Shown here: positions 26,586 to 34,241 of the stretch, piece after piece
How positions within the stretch are numbered: position 1 is the stretch's first letter
How the letters are laid out: each line of letters begins with the position of its first letter
DNA from: Lenisia limosa
Taxonomy: Eukaryota; Protista; Breviatea
NCBI GenBank assembly: GCA_001655205.1
Contig: LPNZ01003457.1
Location: forward strand, 1-37,064
Direction of reading: 5' to 3'
DNA length: 37,064 nucleotides
Made by a program: the position numbers and the translations under genes
Notes under the pieces: model-generated
Database searches by the model: none
Told to the model about the DNA's origin: nothing
What the model saw: the letters and a program-made list of their open reading frames with translations, nothing else

Positions 26586-26811
26586 TTACTTCAAAAAAAC
26601 GAATATACAAACTAAAAATGAATTATATTTGAGAAGAAGTAAAGAATAAGTGTCAAAGAGAAGCACCTTCTCTTCTTCAAGGCAATAAAGGGCCTATCGG
26701 GGATTGGGAATTTTGTGAAAAAACCCGATTTCATTACGGTGGCGTAGAACGGGTTTATGAGTTTGTTGCCAAGTGCCAAGACGTTGGGATTATGGCGCCT
26801 ATTGCCCTAAA

Positions 26812-29800
26812 ATGAATACATTAGTACCACCACCTACTAGACAGGGCTTTGAAGCTCCGTATTTCGAAGTCTCTGTCGCAAGAGACCGCTTCTCAGATGG
26901 CGAAGGCTCCCCTCTCTCTCTCAGCATCTCACAGGCTTCTAGTGAGCAATCGCTCTCTATTTCATCCAGGTCTGCTCACAGTGAACGCAAGGGAAGAAAA
27001 GTTGCCTGCCTCGCTTGTCGTGGAAACAAGTTGAAGTGTGATGGTAATCATCCATGTGCCAATTGCAAAAAGAGAGGAAAGGGTATGAACTTGTGTTTAA
27101 CTAAAGGGGTGTTGGTGGTTTAACATTACATTTTTGAAGCCCTAATCTTCCTCTGATCATTTATAGATAAAGTAAAGGAATATGATATCAAACCTATTAT
27201 CTATGCTAGGATATCTATTTGAAGTGCTGTACTATTCGACAATTGACAAATAAGATTTTCTAAAGATTATTTCCTGATGGGATGCAAATAATTCAGCTCG
27301 GGTTTTTTTTTTTTTTTTGNNNNNNNNNNNNNNNNNNNNNNNNNNNNNNNNNNNNNNNNNNNNNNNNNNNNNNNNNNNNNNNNNNNNNNNNNNNNNNNNN
27401 NNNNNNNNNNNNNNNNNNNNNNNNNNNNNNNNNNNNNNNNNNNNTGTTTCATACTCCAGATTGTGAGTTTCGTGCACACAAACGTCCGGGCCCAAAGACA
27501 AAATCCGGTGACGTGTCCTTCGCACGTTCCACCTCGCCAAACACCCTGCAGCTTCCCGTCAGACAGTCCAGGACAAGAAGACTCTCTGTAGGGACGAACT
27601 TAATGCTTTCAATTCATCTGATATATTGTTCGTGGTTGTCCAAACCCGCCCCTTTTCTCACATTTCAGCCTGTGCGTTCACTGTCTACTCCCGATGTGAT
27701 GTCGGCTCAGATTGACTCCAGATTGAGAAGTGCGTCGGCTTCTGCGTCGGGTACCGAAGTTTCCACACTGTTTCCCCAGGTCTCAGAGGTTTGTATCTTA
27801 AAATTGGCTTCTAATGGCAATTCAGCTCCTTATGGGTGACAATCGGGCAACGTCTCCGCCACCGGAGCCATCTAACGCATGGGCTGCCCAAAGCGAGTCC
27901 AGTTCATTCTATAGTCCTTCAACGGCTTATAGCGGTTCAGATTATGTCGGTTCTGGAGTAGCAGGGTTGCATGTTCTTACTCTACAGTTTTACGAATGCG
28001 AGTCGCATGTTTCATCAAGTTCCATCGCGGCTCCTATCGAAGATACTGCCAATGCCACTGCTGTTCCCACAATTACTCCTATCATCATTTCATCTTCTTG
28101 TCTGTTGGTCGATGTTGTGTCAATTGAGATTAACTATGAGTTTTATGGGCTGTTAATGTTTTATTGTAATACTCTAATATATCATACCTCAGTTCATGTT
28201 TTAGCCATTAACGCACCTTCCTTCCCACTAACCGGTTCTGACTTTGCATCTTTTCGAGGCATCTTCAATGGTAAGTTCAATGTTGTGTGAGTTTTCTCAT
28301 TTTCTTAGAAACCTATTTGAAATTTGCTTCTCTGATGGGTATTGTTGCATCAGTCATACCTTTTCATGAAGAGCCTTCTGATTCAGTAAGCTTTGTTGCC
28401 AGTTGCCGTCATCGTGTTTAAAACAGTAACATGATCCAGGTGGAACAATTTGTCCATCACACAGCTTGCTACATTGGTGCGAATTTCTTCGGACGCTCAG
28501 CAATGGCTAAAAGGTATATACTACTGTGTATCATATACTGAACCTTGGAAATTGTCCCCCTTTTTAATGTTTATTATTCAGCCATCACGAAGCGGCTCGT
28601 GGCCTGGTGGGAGAAATCATTGACAACAACCATGAAGCTCTCCCTGCTGCTATCTTTGTTCTCGGGACTCATCATCTTTTTGAAGGAGATGTGCCTCGTT
28701 TTAAACACGTACGTTGCAATTGATCTAATTTCAGCAACCCATTGGATGAGGTGTTGATTGTTCAGATGGCCCGGGTATCCTTTTCGCAATCGCAATTGGC
28801 TGAGTCTGACAGTACCCTTTCTCGATCTCTCCAAACTATCTGTAGTTTGCTGCCAGGTGAGCTGATCAAAGGACTGATTTTGTTGTGGTAGTTATCAAGA
28901 ATTCATGATAATATGGACCAAAATGAAGCGTGGTTATTAATGTGATGCTCGAAACTGCGTGAATTACTTCGGTCCAGTCCAACCGTCACCTTTTTAGAAG
29001 GAATCCCAACCCATCTCTCACACCAACTTCACTACTTCTCCATACTCAGGTGAGAGCGTCACTCATTGATAGTCTCTCCAATTATCCCTTTTCATTCTCT
29101 CGCAATCTCTTATCACACCCAGAATCTTCTCCTTATTTGTTGGTCCGCTTTGTTCACTCTGGCCACAACAATTGGAAGGAAAAACGGCCCCGGCACTTCT
29201 CAATAAAATGCCACCTTCTGCCGAAAGCTTCCTTAAAGCTGCAATTGCCTCAAATGGAAAAGCCATCTCCCTCCTAACATCACACCAGCACCTGCGACCT
29301 ATCCAGCAAAAGGATGCTGAAGCAATTGCTGATGTGGGGACCGTTTGTTTTATCAATCCTCGCAGCAACCTGGTCCACCGTGTTGATCTTTTCAGCTTCT
29401 TTCAAAATGGGAAGAACCTGTCAGCTCCAACTACCTTGATCAATTCTATTCTGCGAGGCTAAGTATGCACCCCTTTTGTCGTTGCAAACACTTCCACGCT
29501 GACAAGGTTTAACCTATTTAGACCTCATGCTAGCACTTCTCCACTTTCGGTGCGAACAAAATGAAGTAGCACGTCACCACTCAGCTCTTTTGTGCCAAGT
29601 TCTCTCTGTGAGGGGGGGATAGTTCGTTTTTTGGCTTCACACAAACTCTGTTTCTGTTTAGGGAATAAGAAGGCCCATGTTCTTTGTAATTGACCTTGTT
29701 TTAGACTGCAGGAAATGCTTTACTTGCTTTTGGACGGGCGGAAGCTTCTCTCCTTCACAATCTTGTCACATTCCTTGCCAGTTTCTCTGAGGTATACTTG

Positions 29801-30425
29801 TCTACTCCCGCTCCTTAAGCCAGATCTTATGTTTTTATGCCAAATATTGAACTGTTTTATAACAGCTTAGGTTGCCCACTTGAACACAATCCTGAAGTTT
29901 GTGCAGAATATCTGTAGGGAAGGGAGCTGGGTATTTTGTCCTCGCATCATCTCACCTTTTAGCGTCTGGAAATCTGAAAGTCGAGGCCGCATCAATTCAG
30001 TCCGACATTCAAGTGTGTCTCCCTTGGATCAATACCCCCATCAGTCCCTTCGACAAAAATTGTAAGCTTATCTCACGTCTAACATTTCAGCCCTTCTCCC
30101 TCTCAATGACCTTCTTGACACACTTTCCCTCCCAATCCCCCCGGCTCCGAACACACAGTCCCCGCCCTTAATTGTAAGGAGTTATTAAGATATTCTTCAC
30201 AGCCAAATTCCAAGTTAATGCTTCAGACAACCCCGGGGTGGTTGGAGGAGTACGACACCCCCCCTTTACTTCCGAGTTCACAAGAGGTCAGTGTGGCTGT
30301 TGCGTTACAACGTAACGTTGATGAGCTTCCCTTCGTTCATGCTTATGATTTAGATGAACTACCCCCCTCCTCTTATGTTTGCTTCTGATGACAGTGACTT
30401 GTCCCAACTTCCCTCTTTCTATTGA
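26812..30425 (+). CDS. Zn(II)2Cys6 binuclear-cluster transcription factor
   Basis: ATG at 26812. After splicing across the gap-containing intron the motif reads CLACRGNKLKCDGNHPCANCKKRGKDC (C-x2-C-x6-C-x5-C-x2-C-x6-C), followed by basic HKRPGPK, a Ser/Pro-rich linker, a helical middle region and an acidic/Pro tail ending SQLPSFY* (TGA 30423-30425). Confidence 0.88.
27320..27444. other. Assembly gap (N run) next to a poly-T tract, in the intron splitting the Zn cluster
   Basis: N run preceded by a long T run. Confidence 0.95.
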
Positions 30426-30651
30426 TTAGGTAAGCTAATGTCATTTTCTTTGACAATTAAGCTATAGTTACGTATAGCCCAGAGTGTGCGACTATTTATT
30501 GTATGTTTATTAGTAAATTAGGAACTTCTTTCAAATATATATGATTTTCTATTTCCGGTAAATCAGTTAAAAATTCGATATTAATAAACGCCAACAGTGT
30601 AGCTGGCTACCTTTCACTATTTTGTTGTTTCCTGTCAGCAATCATGGCGCC

Positions 30652-33600
30652 TTAGATTGGCACAGTGTCAGGGTTGACATAGTCCGGGGGCTCATATCCT
30701 TCTTCAGGGTAGGGCTTGTAGAAGGTTGCAGGGGGGAGCTAAATGGACTTATTGTGGAGTAAAAATGGGTGTAATATAGGCAGCGCATTAAACAATTATC
30801 AAATGTCAGATAATTGACTCACTTGGAATTCAGAGTCGGATCCGTCTTGATTGGCCACGTAGTATGAGATATAACGAACTTCGCCGGTCTCCTCAAGGAT
30901 CTAGTGTGATAAGCAAGCACCGCCACATTACGATCACGTACCTCATTGGTCACGTGGAAGTAGATGATGTCCTCTCTCTACAGAACTATTAAATTGAATT
31001 GCGACCTTTTCTCACTTACCCCCTTTGGGTCAGCTGGATAAAACCTTGCAGACATTGGGAAGCCCATTCCAAATATCGCATGTTGCCCTAGATACGCCAC
31101 ATTTCCCTGGATATGAAATCGGTTAGAGCAACCCTACTTCTCTGAGGGTGTTCCTATTAGGTTGAGGAGTATTGATCCACGCATGAAGAATGTAAGTCTC
31201 CATTGTCATCGGTCTTGGGAAAACCCCAATATACTCTGTGTCTTGTTGAGGAGGATATTCAACACTAAGACGTGAGGGTGTGAACTGGAATACATCATAA
31301 TAACTTTTTGCTCACCCATATTTCTTGGGGAAGTATGTTTCACAAGTTGGACCGGATGTTGAGAATGGGGCACCCCCACCACCCACAGGGAATGGTGAAA
31401 GTAGCTTTGGTCCTACCATCAGTAAATGGCTTGTCATGACAAACCTTCAGTTGGGACTTCTTGTCGCCTCTTTCTGAAAGGCAACTCTGTAGATCGTCTC
31501 TTTGCTTCCTATTGCGTCAATATCACAAAATCATACTCTTTGGTTGTTTGGTGAGGGGTTCGCAACTGGAAGCTCTCCAGGGTCTAATTTCAGTCAATGA
31601 CATAAATTGAAATAAATGGCTATCGATGAAAGTCCACTCACTTGAGTATTCTGAACAGCAGGGAAAGTATCTCGTGTCTTCAGTGATACCCATGACAGCA
31701 TCGTTCCAGGGGCTGATCTCAATATTGACCTGAGATGCGGGTTGTGTTACACCTGGATTCTCGCCTTGCCATACTGCCCATAATCGGTCTGCCTCGCCAT
31801 GCAATGCTAGAGGTGGTCAATGTCCCATTTATGACATATTCGAACCAGTGAAAAATACAATTTAGACAACCACGCACCCCAAAATAGAGGATCGTAAGCG
31901 GCTGTAAGGACAAGACCTAAGTCTCCACCACCTTGTCCGTGGGCTAAAAAAACATTAATTGTGATGGAATATGGTATGAAAGTTAGACAATGGGCATTTA
32001 ACAGACCTGAATTGTGAGCACTTTCAACATCCTGAGTCATTTCTGCAAACGTGTTCTTAGTGAGTGCTTGTGTAGCCTAATGTTAGTTCATGCTGAAATG
32101 AATAACTTACAGTGTTGACAATGTTGGGCCAAATTGGCTGTCCAGGTTGCCAGCCCCGAGAAGTGAGAGTATTATCCCATTTGCGTCCACGATAGAGAGG
32201 ATTGTCTGTCTCAACTCCTATATAGTATGTAATAAACAGCAAGCAAGAGTATGGTACTCACCGTTCTTCATGTACTTCTCATTTCTGAATATTTCGGGTA
32301 CAGCATGAGTCTGGGCTTCTGAACTACCCCAGTGCCAATACGGAAGAGTTACCTGAATCATCACACATGATTTCTAGAAATCTGGTACAAACAGTTGGTT
32401 CATATTCCATTAAGATCTTCTCGAGTTTGCAAAGGTAGTGCCTGTGCCAGGGAAGGAAGAGGGATGAAGAATGTGGACAATATGCTTGATCCACACCTGC
32501 GAAAGGAGGAATACCTCCATGGATACCAGCGATATCAATCCACCTAGGCTGTAAGTGTCAATTAATTCCACCAACTTGTTTCCGTCATCAAACAAGGCTT
32601 GATACGCATTACGCAGAATTTGGACTTCGGCATCAGTCAAGTCATCTGCTGACTTCCGAATCTAATCGTCAATGATGAAATTGAATTTTACAAAATTACA
32701 CTGTTATTAATATTTACTGAATGTTGCTCACAGATATTCTAACACATGTGTCGGGAAGGGGCTCAACTGGGTCTGGGTCTGGATTTGGGTCTGGATCTGC
32801 AGTAGTGGTTAAAACCATTTTGATGAGTTACCACATACCGGGAGGATCAGTTGGAACATCACTGCCATCTGTGCACTGAGCGCACTTACAGCTCTAGAAT
32901 TTCAGATCCTTTTTTTTAGCCAACTTACCACAATGTTGTACGGGAACTCAGCATTGTATAGTGCACGGCAGGTGTCATTTTTGGCACCACAACAACCAGT
33001 ACATCTTGGGAGATTTCCAGCAACAATCTGAAAAATAAGCAACTTAAAATGATAATATACCTCGAGGCGACATGTTGAAGGAAGCTCCTCTGAAATTGGT
33101 GGTTCGGGAACCGGTTCAGGCTCTAAAATGTGAAACATAACACCAAGCTAGATCCCATACCGTCAGGATCATGAACATTGATCACACCACCCTAAACTGT
33201 CAGAACTTAAACAATGACAATGTCAGCCAACCATTGCTGGGTGGAAGTTGCATTGATAATACAGTTTATCTGGAGTTGCATCGTTCGGAGTGAAATCAAA
33301 TTGTCCAGAGCTTAATGGGTTTGAAGGAACACCGATTCCACCAACTGAGTTACCAAAACCACCCAGGTTTCTGCAAAGTCAAATTTAATGAGATTATCCT
33401 CACGATGTTGTGATATAAAGAGGATGGCTTCGTCCAGTGTTAACAGTGAAGCTGTAGGTCACACCTCGGATGAGTTCCAAAACTGCACCTTGTTCGCCAT
33501 TAACTGAGTAACCCTGAAAACTTAGTTTCACCGTTGTTCTGTTTGGTGTTGGAGGAATTTGAAACATTCCATAGTTAGTCTAAGCTAAACTAGATAAAAA

Positions 33601-33877
33601 ATTAAAAATCAATATCGCTAAGGTAATAAACTTCTAGTATTATTTATTTTGCTTAGAAAGTTTTGTTTTTACATAATTCTCCCTCTACATACCTGCACTG
33701 AACCAATGCCAAACCAGGGATGTTGTGCTGACTTTTGCTGGGTGACAACGGAGAACGGTGCTACAAGGTGAGTATGGACAGTATTCAAATATTCAATACC
33801 AATGACATGCCAAATATCCACAAACGTGTTACCGCGCAAAAGGCTGTTGAAAAAAGCAAAAGAAAGAAGAACCACAT
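30652..33877 (-). CDS. Secreted tyrosinase (type-3 copper) with N-terminal cupredoxin-like domain, Cys-rich module and C-terminal domain
   Basis: Signal peptide MWFFFLLLFSTAFCA (ATG 33877). CuA: WIDIAGIHGG, AYCPHSSSLFLPWHRHYL, VTLPYWHW. CuB: VESAHNSAHG, TAAYDPLFWALHGEADRLWAVWQ. All six His ligands are present. N-domain contains GRSHPLYIT and LYYQCNFHPAMGGVINV. Last exon YEPPDYVNPDTVPI*, TAA at 30652-30654. Confidence 0.9.
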
Positions 33878-34241
33878 TGCTTTGCTGCAAGAGAAAAAGG
33901 GGGAAGGCAAAACAGGAAACCTAGAAACCTATGCAAAAAGCGAAAAGGATATTGTCACTAATCATGCAGTAAACTACAATTAACTTTTTGGAAACAAAGT
34001 TTGATATGCATAGCAAGATATGAGACATAAACAGTCTTTGAATTGACTGACCTTTGTTCACGAAATCGATGGCACTTGCCTTTTTTGGGAATGTCTGTCA
34101 TTTCACACTCTTAAGTATCCTCCTCCACAACTTCGCCACCTCAATTATGTGTTGATGTGTTGTTGATTTGTTGATTTGATTTGCACACCCGAGCCTGACC
34201 CGAGCACCTGATCACCGCTCGCTGTGGGAATGGGCATGGGG

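What the first reader, a model, noticed from the sequence alone, without database searches (positions are those of the whole stretch)
30652..33877. Cupredoxin (type-1 Cu) - tyrosinase (type-3 Cu) fusion: candidate self-loading or self-reducing phenol oxidase
Seen: after the signal peptide, FSVVTQQKSAQHPWFGIGSVQGYSVNGEQGAVLELIRGVTYSFTVNTGRSHPLYIT..FDFTPNDATPDKLYYQCNFHPAMGGVINV provides His (33424-33426) plus Cys-x2-His-x2-Met (33232-33252), the full blue-copper ligand set. The same spliced ORF has an intact binuclear site, the Cys-x-His (YCPH) of thioether-forming tyrosinases, and Glu plus Asn next to HisB1 (VESAHN), associated with monophenolase activity. Known: Streptomyces tyrosinase needs a separate caddie protein to load copper, met-tyrosinase must be reduced to turn over, and type-1 sites feed electrons in laccases and nitrite reductases. 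Inference: the cupredoxin acts in cis as a copper donor or electron shuttle. I do not recognise this T1+T3 architecture as a characterised enzyme.
Basis: partly seen in the sequence, partly recalled or inferred. Interest (0 to 1): 0.85.

Follow-up and report, generated by a model that had tools for sequence, protein, structure and literature searches.

The report
Blue-copper module fused to a tyrosinase
A protist gene appears to encode a secreted tyrosinase carrying, on a long flexible tether, a small blue-copper-type domain of a family otherwise found on marine phage tail fibres and surface proteins; the combination looks new, but it has no transcript evidence and nothing yet shows that the two copper sites work together.

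Summary
A 24-exon GT-AG model on the minus strand (ATG 33877, TAA 30652-30654, 675 aa) closes without a stop. It joins a signal peptide, a ~105-aa N-domain, two Pro-rich linkers around a Cys-rich module, a complete tyrosinase core, a dibasic-rich linker and a C-terminal lid-like domain.

The N-domain is a genuine cupredoxin. It scores 50.7 bits against a profile built only from marine phage and bacterial homologues, and it gives two colinear hits to Pfam PF25489. A homologue modelled at pLDDT 90.5 matches rusticyanin, nitrite reductase, amicyanin and plastocyanin. His60, Cys107, His110 and Met113 fall on the family's ligand columns. Of 84 distinct copies, 67 keep all four and nine have lost all or three of them, which argues for a real metal site.

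No other tyrosinase with this domain turned up, and the nearest tyrosinases (bacterial type, 37% identity) start at the catalytic domain. However, only single exons could be submitted, so absence elsewhere is not shown.

The proposed in-cis copper donor or electron shuttle role is untested. The module occurs mostly in non-redox fibre and adhesion proteins, and here it is separated from the enzyme by about 95 residues. No RNA evidence exists.

Verdict: a new variant of a known kind, of moderate interest.

The parts
30652..33877 (-). Whole gene model: 24 exons, 675 codons, ATG 33877 to TAA 30652-30654
   Evidence: All 23 introns are GT-AG, 28-179 nt. There is no in-frame stop.
33833..33877 (-). 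Exon 1: signal peptide (15 aa, hydrophobic core)
   Evidence: Read from the sequence. No signal-peptide predictor was run.
33161..33737 (-). Exons 2-5 (33693-33737, 33404-33513, 33232-33370, 33161-33191): cupredoxin N-domain, model residues about 16-121. His60 is at 33424-33426. Cys107-x2-His110-x2-Met113 is at 33232-33252.
   Evidence: Two colinear Pfam PF25489 hits. 50.7 bits to a family HMM built without window rows. Ligand columns aligned. A homologue model has the cupredoxin fold.
33061..33122 (-). Exon 6: first Pro/Glu-rich linker
   Evidence: Translation.
32839..33027 (-). Exons 7-8: Cys-rich module (9 Cys) with an R-C-x-G-C-C motif
   Evidence: Weak PDGF/VEGF hit, PF00341, E 5e-4, 20.8 bits, below the 27-bit cut-off.
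32732..32796 (-). Exon 9: second Pro/Asp-rich linker
   Evidence: Translation.
31642..32661 (-). Exons 10-16: tyrosinase core, model residues about 216-470. CuA is H254, C268-x-H270, H279. CuB is E380, H383, N384, H387, H410.
   Evidence: Exon 11 alone hits PF00264 at E 2.4e-10, 41.6 bits against a 22.6-bit cut-off. blastp to P0014 gives 36.6% identity over 224 aa, E 2e-38, contiguous.
31445..31583 (-). Exons 17-18: basic linker with KRR (481-483) and RKRR (490-493) dibasic sites
   Evidence: Translation. A cleavage role is inferred only.
30652..31412 (-). Exons 19-24: C-terminal beta-rich domain, lid-like
   Evidence: Weak similarity to the C-terminal domains of P0014 (13 bits, E 4e-5 in a 19-sequence set) and of the fungal P0009. 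The exon 19/20 junction is the least certain one in the model.

Best explanation
One gene encodes a secreted, modular pro-tyrosinase. Its catalytic core and C-terminal lid-like domain are of the bacterial type. I infer that they work as in other latent tyrosinases: O2 binds the two-copper site, phenols are oxidised to quinones, and the enzyme is probably activated by cleavage at the KRR/RKRR sites before the C-terminal domain.

In the eukaryotic lineage two extra modules were added in front of the core, between extended Pro-rich linkers: a copper-site-bearing cupredoxin and a small Cys-rich module. Both are encoded by blocks of exons that start and end in phase 0.

The cupredoxin most likely binds one copper through His60, Cys107, His110 and Met113. 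I think it most likely acts as an independent accessory module, meaning a copper-stabilised extracellular domain used for positioning or binding, as its relatives on phage fibres and surface proteins appear to be. It is probably not a fixed electron wire into the tyrosinase site. Occasional electron exchange by transient docking remains possible.

Shown here: the gene structure, domain identities, fold of the family and ligand conservation. Inferred: copper binding, secretion, cleavage and the accessory role.
For: Gene model and domain identities:
- The 24-exon ORF is intact.
- The largest intron between the cupredoxin exons and the tyrosinase exons is 70 nt. The first Met inside the tyrosinase part lies after CuA, so there is no room or start for a second gene.
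- The tyrosinase core is validated against P0014 and PF00264.
- The N-domain is homologous to a family profile at 50.7 bits and to PF25489.

Fold and metal site:
- The family model has pLDDT 90.5 and a cupredoxin fold.
- The PDB profile search puts plastocyanin and nitrite-reductase type-1 loops on the same Cys/His/Met columns.
- Of 84 distinct copies, 67 keep all four ligands and nine have lost all or three of them.

Context of the module family:
- Partners are phage Gp9/10 baseplate, collagen, C1q, subtilase, LRR, IPT/TIG, F5/8-C and Laminin_G_3 proteins.
- There is no tyrosinase within 10 kb of four bacterial copies.
- The nearest tyrosinases begin at the catalytic domain and have no cupredoxin neighbour.
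Against: - A His/Cys/His/Met site has no established role other than electron transfer. Its Pfam relatives (PF25489) sit in DM13-DOMON-cytochrome b561 proteins, which are redox proteins. Finding it next to another copper redox centre may therefore not be accidental.
- No RNA supports the model.
- The spliced protein itself could not be folded or scanned whole, so the distance and any docking between the two sites are unknown.
- The function of the module in phage fibres is itself unknown, so reasoning from that context is weak.
Confidence: 0.45

Rival explanations
1. Tethered electron shuttle. The blue-copper domain takes single electrons from an extracellular reductant. By docking on the catalytic domain it reduces met-tyrosinase (Cu(II)-Cu(II)) to the oxygen-binding deoxy form. 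This would remove the lag phase and keep the enzyme active where o-diphenols are scarce.
For: - The type-1 ligand set is complete and under family-wide constraint.
- The related PF25489 domains of At5g54830 and Skeletor lie in predicted electron-transfer proteins and are the top Swiss-Prot fold hits.
- There is precedent for an extra tethered cupredoxin on a copper enzyme: the three-domain nitrite reductase of Hyphomicrobium denitrificans, PDB 2dv6, is the second-best structural match.
Against: - About 95 residues of Pro-rich linkers and a Cys-rich module separate the domains.
- Two electrons are needed, and a type-1 site carries one.
- Most relatives of the module sit in non-redox proteins.
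- The closest tyrosinases need no such partner.
- No second example of the pairing was found.
Confidence: 0.25
2. In-cis copper donor (caddie-like). The N-domain holds copper in the secretory pathway and hands it to the binuclear site, as the separate MelC1 protein does for Streptomyces MelC2.
For: - Cupredoxin-fold copper chaperones exist: CupA of Streptococcus pneumoniae, described in the review PMC7558416.
- The nearest tyrosinases here show no caddie gene in the contigs seen, so loading must be solved some other way.
Against: - The site is the classical buried His/Cys/His/Met type, which binds copper tightly. It is not the Cys/Met-rich exposed site of chaperones (my own knowledge).
- One copper per domain cannot fill a two-copper site.
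- No part of the gene gave a hit to a caddie family.
- The same module is abundant in proteins with no copper enzyme attached.
Confidence: 0.07
3. The fusion is not real as a protein. The locus may be silent or decaying, or the true transcripts differ from my model. This is possible because other contigs of this mixed assembly are reported to use non-AG acceptors.
For: - No transcript was found in the only RNA run of the study.
- No orthologue was found anywhere.
- Earlier notes report GT-TG introns in this assembly.
- The exon 19/20 junction is weak.
Against: - 675 codons across 24 exons stay open.
- Every catalytic and ligand residue is intact.
- Junctions are confirmed by gap-free alignment to independent homologues for both domains.
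- Introns between the domains are at most 70 nt.
Confidence: 0.1

Closest known systems
Bacterial-type tyrosinases with a C-terminal extension (P0014-like, 389 aa; Pfam PF00264)
   Same: The catalytic core is 36.6% identical over 224 aa, with all six His, the Cys-x-His motif, and Glu and Asn at CuB. There is a weakly similar C-terminal domain.
   Different: These proteins start directly at the catalytic domain, or with a Tat signal. They have no cupredoxin, no Cys-rich module and no Pro-rich linkers. They have no introns.
Cupredoxin modules of marine phage baseplate/tail-fibre-like proteins and bacterial surface proteins (e.g. Synechococcus phage S-N03 'baseplate wedge tail fiber connector', residues 344-458)
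   Same: This is the same domain family (40-46 bits pairwise, 50.7 bits to the profile). The His...Cys-x2-His-x2-Met pattern and the HP and LYYQC motifs are the same.
   Different: The partners are fibre, collagen, C1q, LRR or protease modules, not a copper enzyme. The function there is unknown.
Pfam PF25489, At5g54830-like domain (Arabidopsis cytochrome b561/DM13/DOMON protein residues 388-509; Drosophila Skeletor 544-729)
   Same: It is the only Pfam family hit by both N-domain exons, colinearly. It gives the top Swiss-Prot fold matches of the family model.
   Different: Each fragment scores below the 27-bit cut-off, and the spliced domain could not be scanned. This gene has no DM13, DOMON or b561 part. 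I could not check whether those proteins keep the four ligands.
Molluscan haemocyanin functional unit h (KLH1-h, PDB 3L6W)
   Same: It has a tyrosinase-superfamily type-3 copper domain and a cupredoxin-like domain in one chain (PMC6992001, citing Jaenicke et al. 2010).
   Different: There the cupredoxin-like domain is C-terminal and, to my knowledge, has no copper site. It is an oxygen carrier, not an enzyme. No sequence relation was seen here.
Three-domain copper nitrite reductase of Hyphomicrobium denitrificans (PDB 2dv6), and multicopper oxidases
   Same: An extra type-1 cupredoxin is attached to a copper enzyme (nitrite reductase). A type-1 site feeds another copper centre (laccases). Both are structural matches of the family model.
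   Different: The acceptor centres there are built from cupredoxin domains (type-2, or the trinuclear cluster). Here the partner is a helical tyrosinase-type binuclear site reached only through long linkers.
Streptomyces MelC1 caddie with MelC2 tyrosinase
   Same: A helper polypeptide is dedicated to a tyrosinase.
   Different: The caddie is a separate protein of a different fold without a Cys/His/His/Met site (my own knowledge). Exon 11 gives only weak similarity to MelC2 (NF047834, E 0.001) and nothing matches a caddie.

Membership tests
Tyrosinase / type-3 copper (PF00264) | Profile match above the curated cut-off | tested here: met
   Exon 11 alone scores 41.6 bits against a 22.6-bit cut-off, E 2.4e-10. 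The spliced core against P0014 gives E 2e-38.
Tyrosinase / type-3 copper (PF00264) | Six copper-binding histidines (three CuA, three CuB) | tested here: met
   H254, H270 and H279; H383, H387 and H410. They are in conserved motifs and aligned to P0014 and other homologues.
Tyrosinase / type-3 copper (PF00264) | Cys-x-His at CuA, and Glu plus Asn at the first CuB His (features linked to the thioether bond and to monophenolase activity) | tested here: met
   C268-P-H270, E380 and N384 are present in the sequence. The bond and the activity themselves are not testable here.
Tyrosinase / type-3 copper (PF00264) | Phenol oxidase activity and oxy-form spectrum | not testable with these tools
   Needs expressed protein.
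Cupredoxin, type-1 (blue) copper domain | Greek-key beta-sandwich fold | tested here: met
   This was tested on a homologue, not on the window protein. The AF2 model of P0023:343-457 has pLDDT 90.5. Foldseek PDB hits are rusticyanin, nitrite reductase, amicyanin and plastocyanin, E 5e-5 to 1e-3. The window domain is tied to it by 50.7 bits.
Cupredoxin, type-1 (blue) copper domain | Ligand set His ... Cys-x(n)-His-x(n)-Met at the canonical positions | tested here: met
   His60, Cys107, His110 and Met113 lie on the family's ligand columns. The profile aligns these columns with the plastocyanin and nitrite-reductase type-1 loops. 67 of 84 copies keep all four, and nine have lost all or three of them.
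Cupredoxin, type-1 (blue) copper domain | Match to the classical Pfam models PF00127 / PF13473 | tested here: inconclusive
   There was no hit for the separate exons. The spliced domain could not be submitted. Atlas feature searches place both exons near PF00127 and PF13473 clusters, which is a lead only.
Cupredoxin, type-1 (blue) copper domain | Copper binding, ~600 nm band, small parallel hyperfine EPR splitting | not testable with these tools
   Needs protein.
PF25489 At5g54830-like domain | Profile match above the 27-bit cut-off | tested here: inconclusive
   Two colinear fragments scored 20.2 bits (profile 31-62) and 16.8 bits (profile 88-118), each below the cut-off. The whole domain could not be scanned.
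PF25489 At5g54830-like domain | Association with DM13, DOMON or cytochrome b561 domains | tested here: not met
   No such domain was found in any exon of the gene.
Multicopper oxidase (laccase-like) | Two or more cupredoxin domains carrying a trinuclear cluster | tested here: not met
   There is only one cupredoxin domain. The second copper centre is a tyrosinase-type binuclear site.
MelC1-type tyrosinase caddie | Sequence similarity to caddie proteins | tested here: not met
   No caddie family appeared among the Pfam or NCBIfam hits of any exon.

The most novel reading that the evidence does not exclude
This would be a self-priming phenol oxidase. A tethered type-1 copper domain would deliver electrons to a tyrosinase-type binuclear site. 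That would be an independent, modular reinvention of the type-1-feeds-oxygen-site logic of laccases, built from unrelated folds, in a protist from a low-oxygen culture.
Probability: 0.2. Interest if true: 0.85.

Novelty: new variant of a known kind. Interest (0 to 1): 0.55.

Why it matters
Tyrosinases stall in the met form and need a reductant or an o-diphenol to start. How they are primed and how they receive copper outside Streptomyces is still poorly understood. A natural protein that carries a blue-copper centre on the same chain would be a ready-made test of whether one-electron delivery can prime a binuclear site. It could also be a template for lag-free engineered phenol oxidases.

The follow-up also showed something independent of that question. 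The N-domain belongs to a large family of cupredoxin modules on marine phage fibres, bacterial surface proteins and protist proteins, and these modules keep the four copper ligands. I found no paper on this in the one literature search aimed at it, which used the terms cupredoxin, cyanophage and baseplate. It raises the question of what a redox-type copper site does on a virion.

Tried and rejected
- **Whole-protein searches were not possible.** The spliced protein has no reference, so Pfam, structure prediction and the large database searches could only take single exons of at most 54 aa.
- **Exhaustive phmmer of exon 11 against 1.84 billion representatives.** It gave 19 hits, the best at 62% identity over 50 aa. 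None was an orthologue, and none of the 13 whose sequences I read carries the N-domain. Four of the multi-stretch hits (P0001, P0004, P0006, P0010) gave no blastp match to the model and are spurious; the other two (P0003, P0016) are repeated type-3 copper units that do match its tyrosinase core.
- **RNA evidence.** The one RNA run of the study holds nothing for this gene. The other run is the DNA source.
- **Close relatives of exon 4 and exon 11.** None was found for either exon in JGI metagenomes. For exon 4, none was found in IMG/VR or by word search in the 5.8-billion protein set.
- **phmmer of exons 3 and 4 against PDB sequences.** Nothing was found.
- **Aligning all tyrosinase exons to P0014 to build a search profile.** MAFFT scattered the fragments, so I abandoned it.
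- **Profile search with a full-length phage protein as first row.** The profile took in the whole phage protein. The 120 rows listed are phage-like, and none carries PF00264. This is uninformative about fusions.
- **Gene neighbourhoods.** There is no cupredoxin gene beside P0014 or P0015. There is no tyrosinase within 10 kb of four bacterial copies of the module.
- **Brute-force enumeration of C-terminal splice paths.** It timed out, so I solved the junctions by hand.
- **Two-gene reading.** I rejected it because there is no start, signal peptide or space between the domains.
- **Multicopper-oxidase reading.** I rejected it (see membership test).
Full report
**What is in the sequence**

Reading the minus strand of 30400-34200 shows a typical intron-rich eukaryotic gene. 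I rebuilt it by hand and checked it by script.
- It has 24 exons and 23 introns, all GT-AG, of 28-179 nt (mostly 31-44 nt).
- The 2028-nt CDS runs from ATG 33877 to TAA 30654-30652 without a stop, giving 675 aa.
- One detail differs. The in-frame acceptor is at 33738, so the mature protein starts near QKSAQHPW.

**Layout of the protein (model numbering)**
- Signal peptide, residues 1-15.
- N-domain, about 16-121, with His60, Cys107, His110 and Met113.
- A Pro/Glu-rich linker.
- A Cys-rich module with an R-C-x-G-C-C motif.
- A Pro/Asp-rich linker.
- The tyrosinase core, about 216-470. CuA is H254, C268-P-H270 and H279. CuB is E380, H383, N384, H387 and H410.
- A basic linker with KRR (481-483) and RKRR (490-493).
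- A C-terminal beta-rich domain running to residue 675.

**Is it one gene?**

No RNA evidence could be obtained. Of the two runs found, one is the DNA source of the contig. The other is a poly-A metatranscriptome of the same study and holds none of this locus. The case for one gene therefore rests on structure.
- The frame stays open through all 23 junctions.
- The introns between the last N-domain exon and the first tyrosinase exon are 38, 33, 35, 42 and 70 nt. That leaves no room for a terminator and a promoter.
- The tyrosinase part has no Met before CuA and no signal peptide of its own.
- The junctions are confirmed by independent homologues. Residues 216-434 align without breaks to the bacterial-type tyrosinase P0014 (36.6% identity, E 2e-38). 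Residues 22-106 of the N-domain align without breaks to a family profile.
- The C-terminal domain shows weak similarity to the C-terminal domains of P0014 and of a fungal tyrosinase, across the exon 20/21 junction.
- The exon 19/20 junction is the least secure.
- Earlier notes of this scan say the assembly is a mixed culture. They attribute its eukaryotic contigs to the breviate Lenisia limosa, with many GT-TG mini-introns. I did not verify that for this contig. In this gene every intron can be modelled with AG.

**The tyrosinase**

Exon 11 alone passes the Pfam gathering score for PF00264 (41.6 bits). All six histidines, the Cys-x-His motif, and the Glu and Asn at CuB are present. The closest proteins found are bacterial-type enzymes that begin exactly where this catalytic domain begins. 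The 215 residues in front of it are therefore an addition. The added modules are encoded by exon blocks that begin and end in phase 0, which fits insertion by exon shuffling. That last point is an inference.

**The N-domain**

Pfam gave no hit to the classical plastocyanin models. Both main exons hit PF25489 (At5g54830-like domain) colinearly: 20.2 bits on profile positions 31-62 and 16.8 bits on positions 88-118. PDB sequence searches with the exons found nothing.

The turn came from tblastn against phage genomes. Both exons hit virion, baseplate and tail-fibre-like proteins of marine cyanophages.
- With the spliced domain, local phmmer gives 40-46 bits to these proteins over residues 27-104.
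- A search seeded with the S-N03 protein returned 27 marine phage-like proteins carrying the domain.
- A profile built only from eight of them scores the window's domain at 50.7 bits.
- The same domains also give weak PF25489 hits.

**Fold of the family**

An AlphaFold2 model of one family member (P0023:343-457, with the family alignment) has pLDDT 90.5 and is all-beta.
- Foldseek against the PDB returns rusticyanin, copper nitrite reductases, AcoP, amicyanin and plastocyanin (E 5e-5 to 1e-3).
- Against Swiss-Prot models, the two best hits are Skeletor residues 544-729 and At5g54830 residues 388-509, followed by MauL and amicyanin. This ties the family to PF25489.
- A profile search of PDB sequences aligns the family's Cys/His/Met stretch with the type-1 loops of nitrite reductase and plastocyanin. 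It also aligns the first His with the plastocyanin His. These hits are marginal (E 0.03-0.2) but consistent.

**Is the copper site likely real?**

In the alignments the window's His60, Cys107, His110 and Met113 fall on the family's ligand columns. Across 84 distinct domain copies in the fetched proteins and loci:
- 67 have His/Cys/His/Met.
- Nine have lost all four or three of the four. These include the first repeat of P0021 and related proteins, and four tandem copies in a Cryomorphaceae protein.
- Three partial hits (first His column not aligned) keep Cys and His and have Gln in place of Met.

This all-or-none pattern is what a functional metal site produces. Copper binding itself is not shown.

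**Context of the module**

AFDB clusters and Atlas structures show the same module, at TM 0.8-0.96, in several kinds of protein:
- T4 Gp9/10-like baseplate proteins;
- collagen- and C1q-containing phage proteins, and subtilases;
- BspA-type LRR surface proteins, and CHRD, DUF7282, F5/8-C and Laminin_G_3 proteins;
- protist IPT/TIG fragments.

Some are annotated as blue copper domain proteins. Four bacterial genomes carry the module in large proteins, and none has a tyrosinase within 10 kb. No tyrosinase appears among the listed relatives. No cupredoxin gene lies beside the two nearest tyrosinases whose contigs I read.

**How it most likely works**

The robust part is a secreted modular pro-tyrosinase with a copper-site-bearing cupredoxin at its N-terminus. 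For the role of that module I weigh three readings.
- **Independent accessory domain (about 0.45).** This is favoured by the family's mostly non-redox partners and by the roughly 95 residues of extended linkers and a Cys-rich module between the domains. It is also favoured by the self-sufficiency of the closest tyrosinases.
- **Tethered electron shuttle (about 0.25).** This is favoured by the chemistry of such sites, by the redox context of PF25489 in DM13-DOMON-b561 proteins, and by the precedent of a nitrite reductase with an extra cupredoxin (2dv6). It has to overcome the one-electron versus two-electron mismatch and the lack of a fixed geometry.
- **Copper donor (about 0.07).** This is the least likely. 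The site type holds copper tightly and carries only one ion, although cupredoxin-fold chaperones such as CupA do exist (PMC7558416).

About 0.1 remains for a silent or mis-modelled locus.

The dibasic sites before the C-terminal domain suggest activation by proteolysis, as in other latent tyrosinases. That is an inference.

**Comparison with what is known, and novelty**

A tyrosinase-superfamily domain with a cupredoxin-like domain in one chain is known from molluscan haemocyanin unit h (PMC6992001). That domain is C-terminal and, to my knowledge, copper-free. Literature searches for tyrosinase with cupredoxin or plastocyanin-like domains found no description of a type-1 plus tyrosinase enzyme.

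My database tests of the pairing were limited to single exons and to the top-ranked relatives. I can therefore say it was not found, not that it is absent.

I rate it a new variant of a known kind. Interest is moderate because the pairing is intriguing and directly testable, but it is unexpressed in the available data and functionally unproven. The wider family of ligand-bearing cupredoxin modules on phage fibres is a separate lead worth following.

Noticed in passing
L006:1268-2770 (phage S-N03), L004, L005, L007-L010; proteins P0020-P0164: About 110-aa cupredoxin modules with a His/Cys/His/Met set are widespread in marine cyanophage baseplate/tail-fibre-like proteins and bacterial surface proteins. 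67 of 84 copies keep all four ligands, and nine have lost all or three of them. I found no paper on a blue-copper-type site on phage virion proteins in the search I ran.
   Followed up: partly
window 32929-33027 (-), exon 7: The Cys-rich module has an R-C-x-G-C-C motif and a weak PDGF/VEGF cystine-knot hit (PF00341, E 5e-4, 20.8 bits, below cut-off). This is an odd module to find between a cupredoxin and a tyrosinase in a protist.
   Followed up: no
window 31445-31508 (-), exon 18: KRR and RKRR dibasic sites lie in the linker between the tyrosinase core and the C-terminal domain. They are candidate convertase cleavage sites for activating a latent enzyme.
   Followed up: no
L010:6898-9381: A Cryomorphaceae protein has four tandem copies of the module, all lacking the copper ligands (SSNI, HSNI, QSDL, QSSI). 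This looks like a natural ligand-free branch of the family.
   Followed up: no
window 26773-27123 (+): An ORF carries a fungal-type Zn2Cys6 binuclear-cluster motif (C-x2-C-x6-C-x5-C-x2-C...). It hints at the lineage of this microbial eukaryote.
   Followed up: no
window about 300-600 and about 27320-27450: There are runs of N (assembly gaps) inside the window, seen as X runs in ORF translations.
   Followed up: no
window 30652-33877: All 23 introns of this gene can be modelled as GT-AG with lengths of 28-179 nt. Earlier notes on other contigs of the same assembly report 21-35-nt introns, about half of them ending in TG. Either this contig is from another eukaryote in the culture, or the usage differs between genes.
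   Followed up: no
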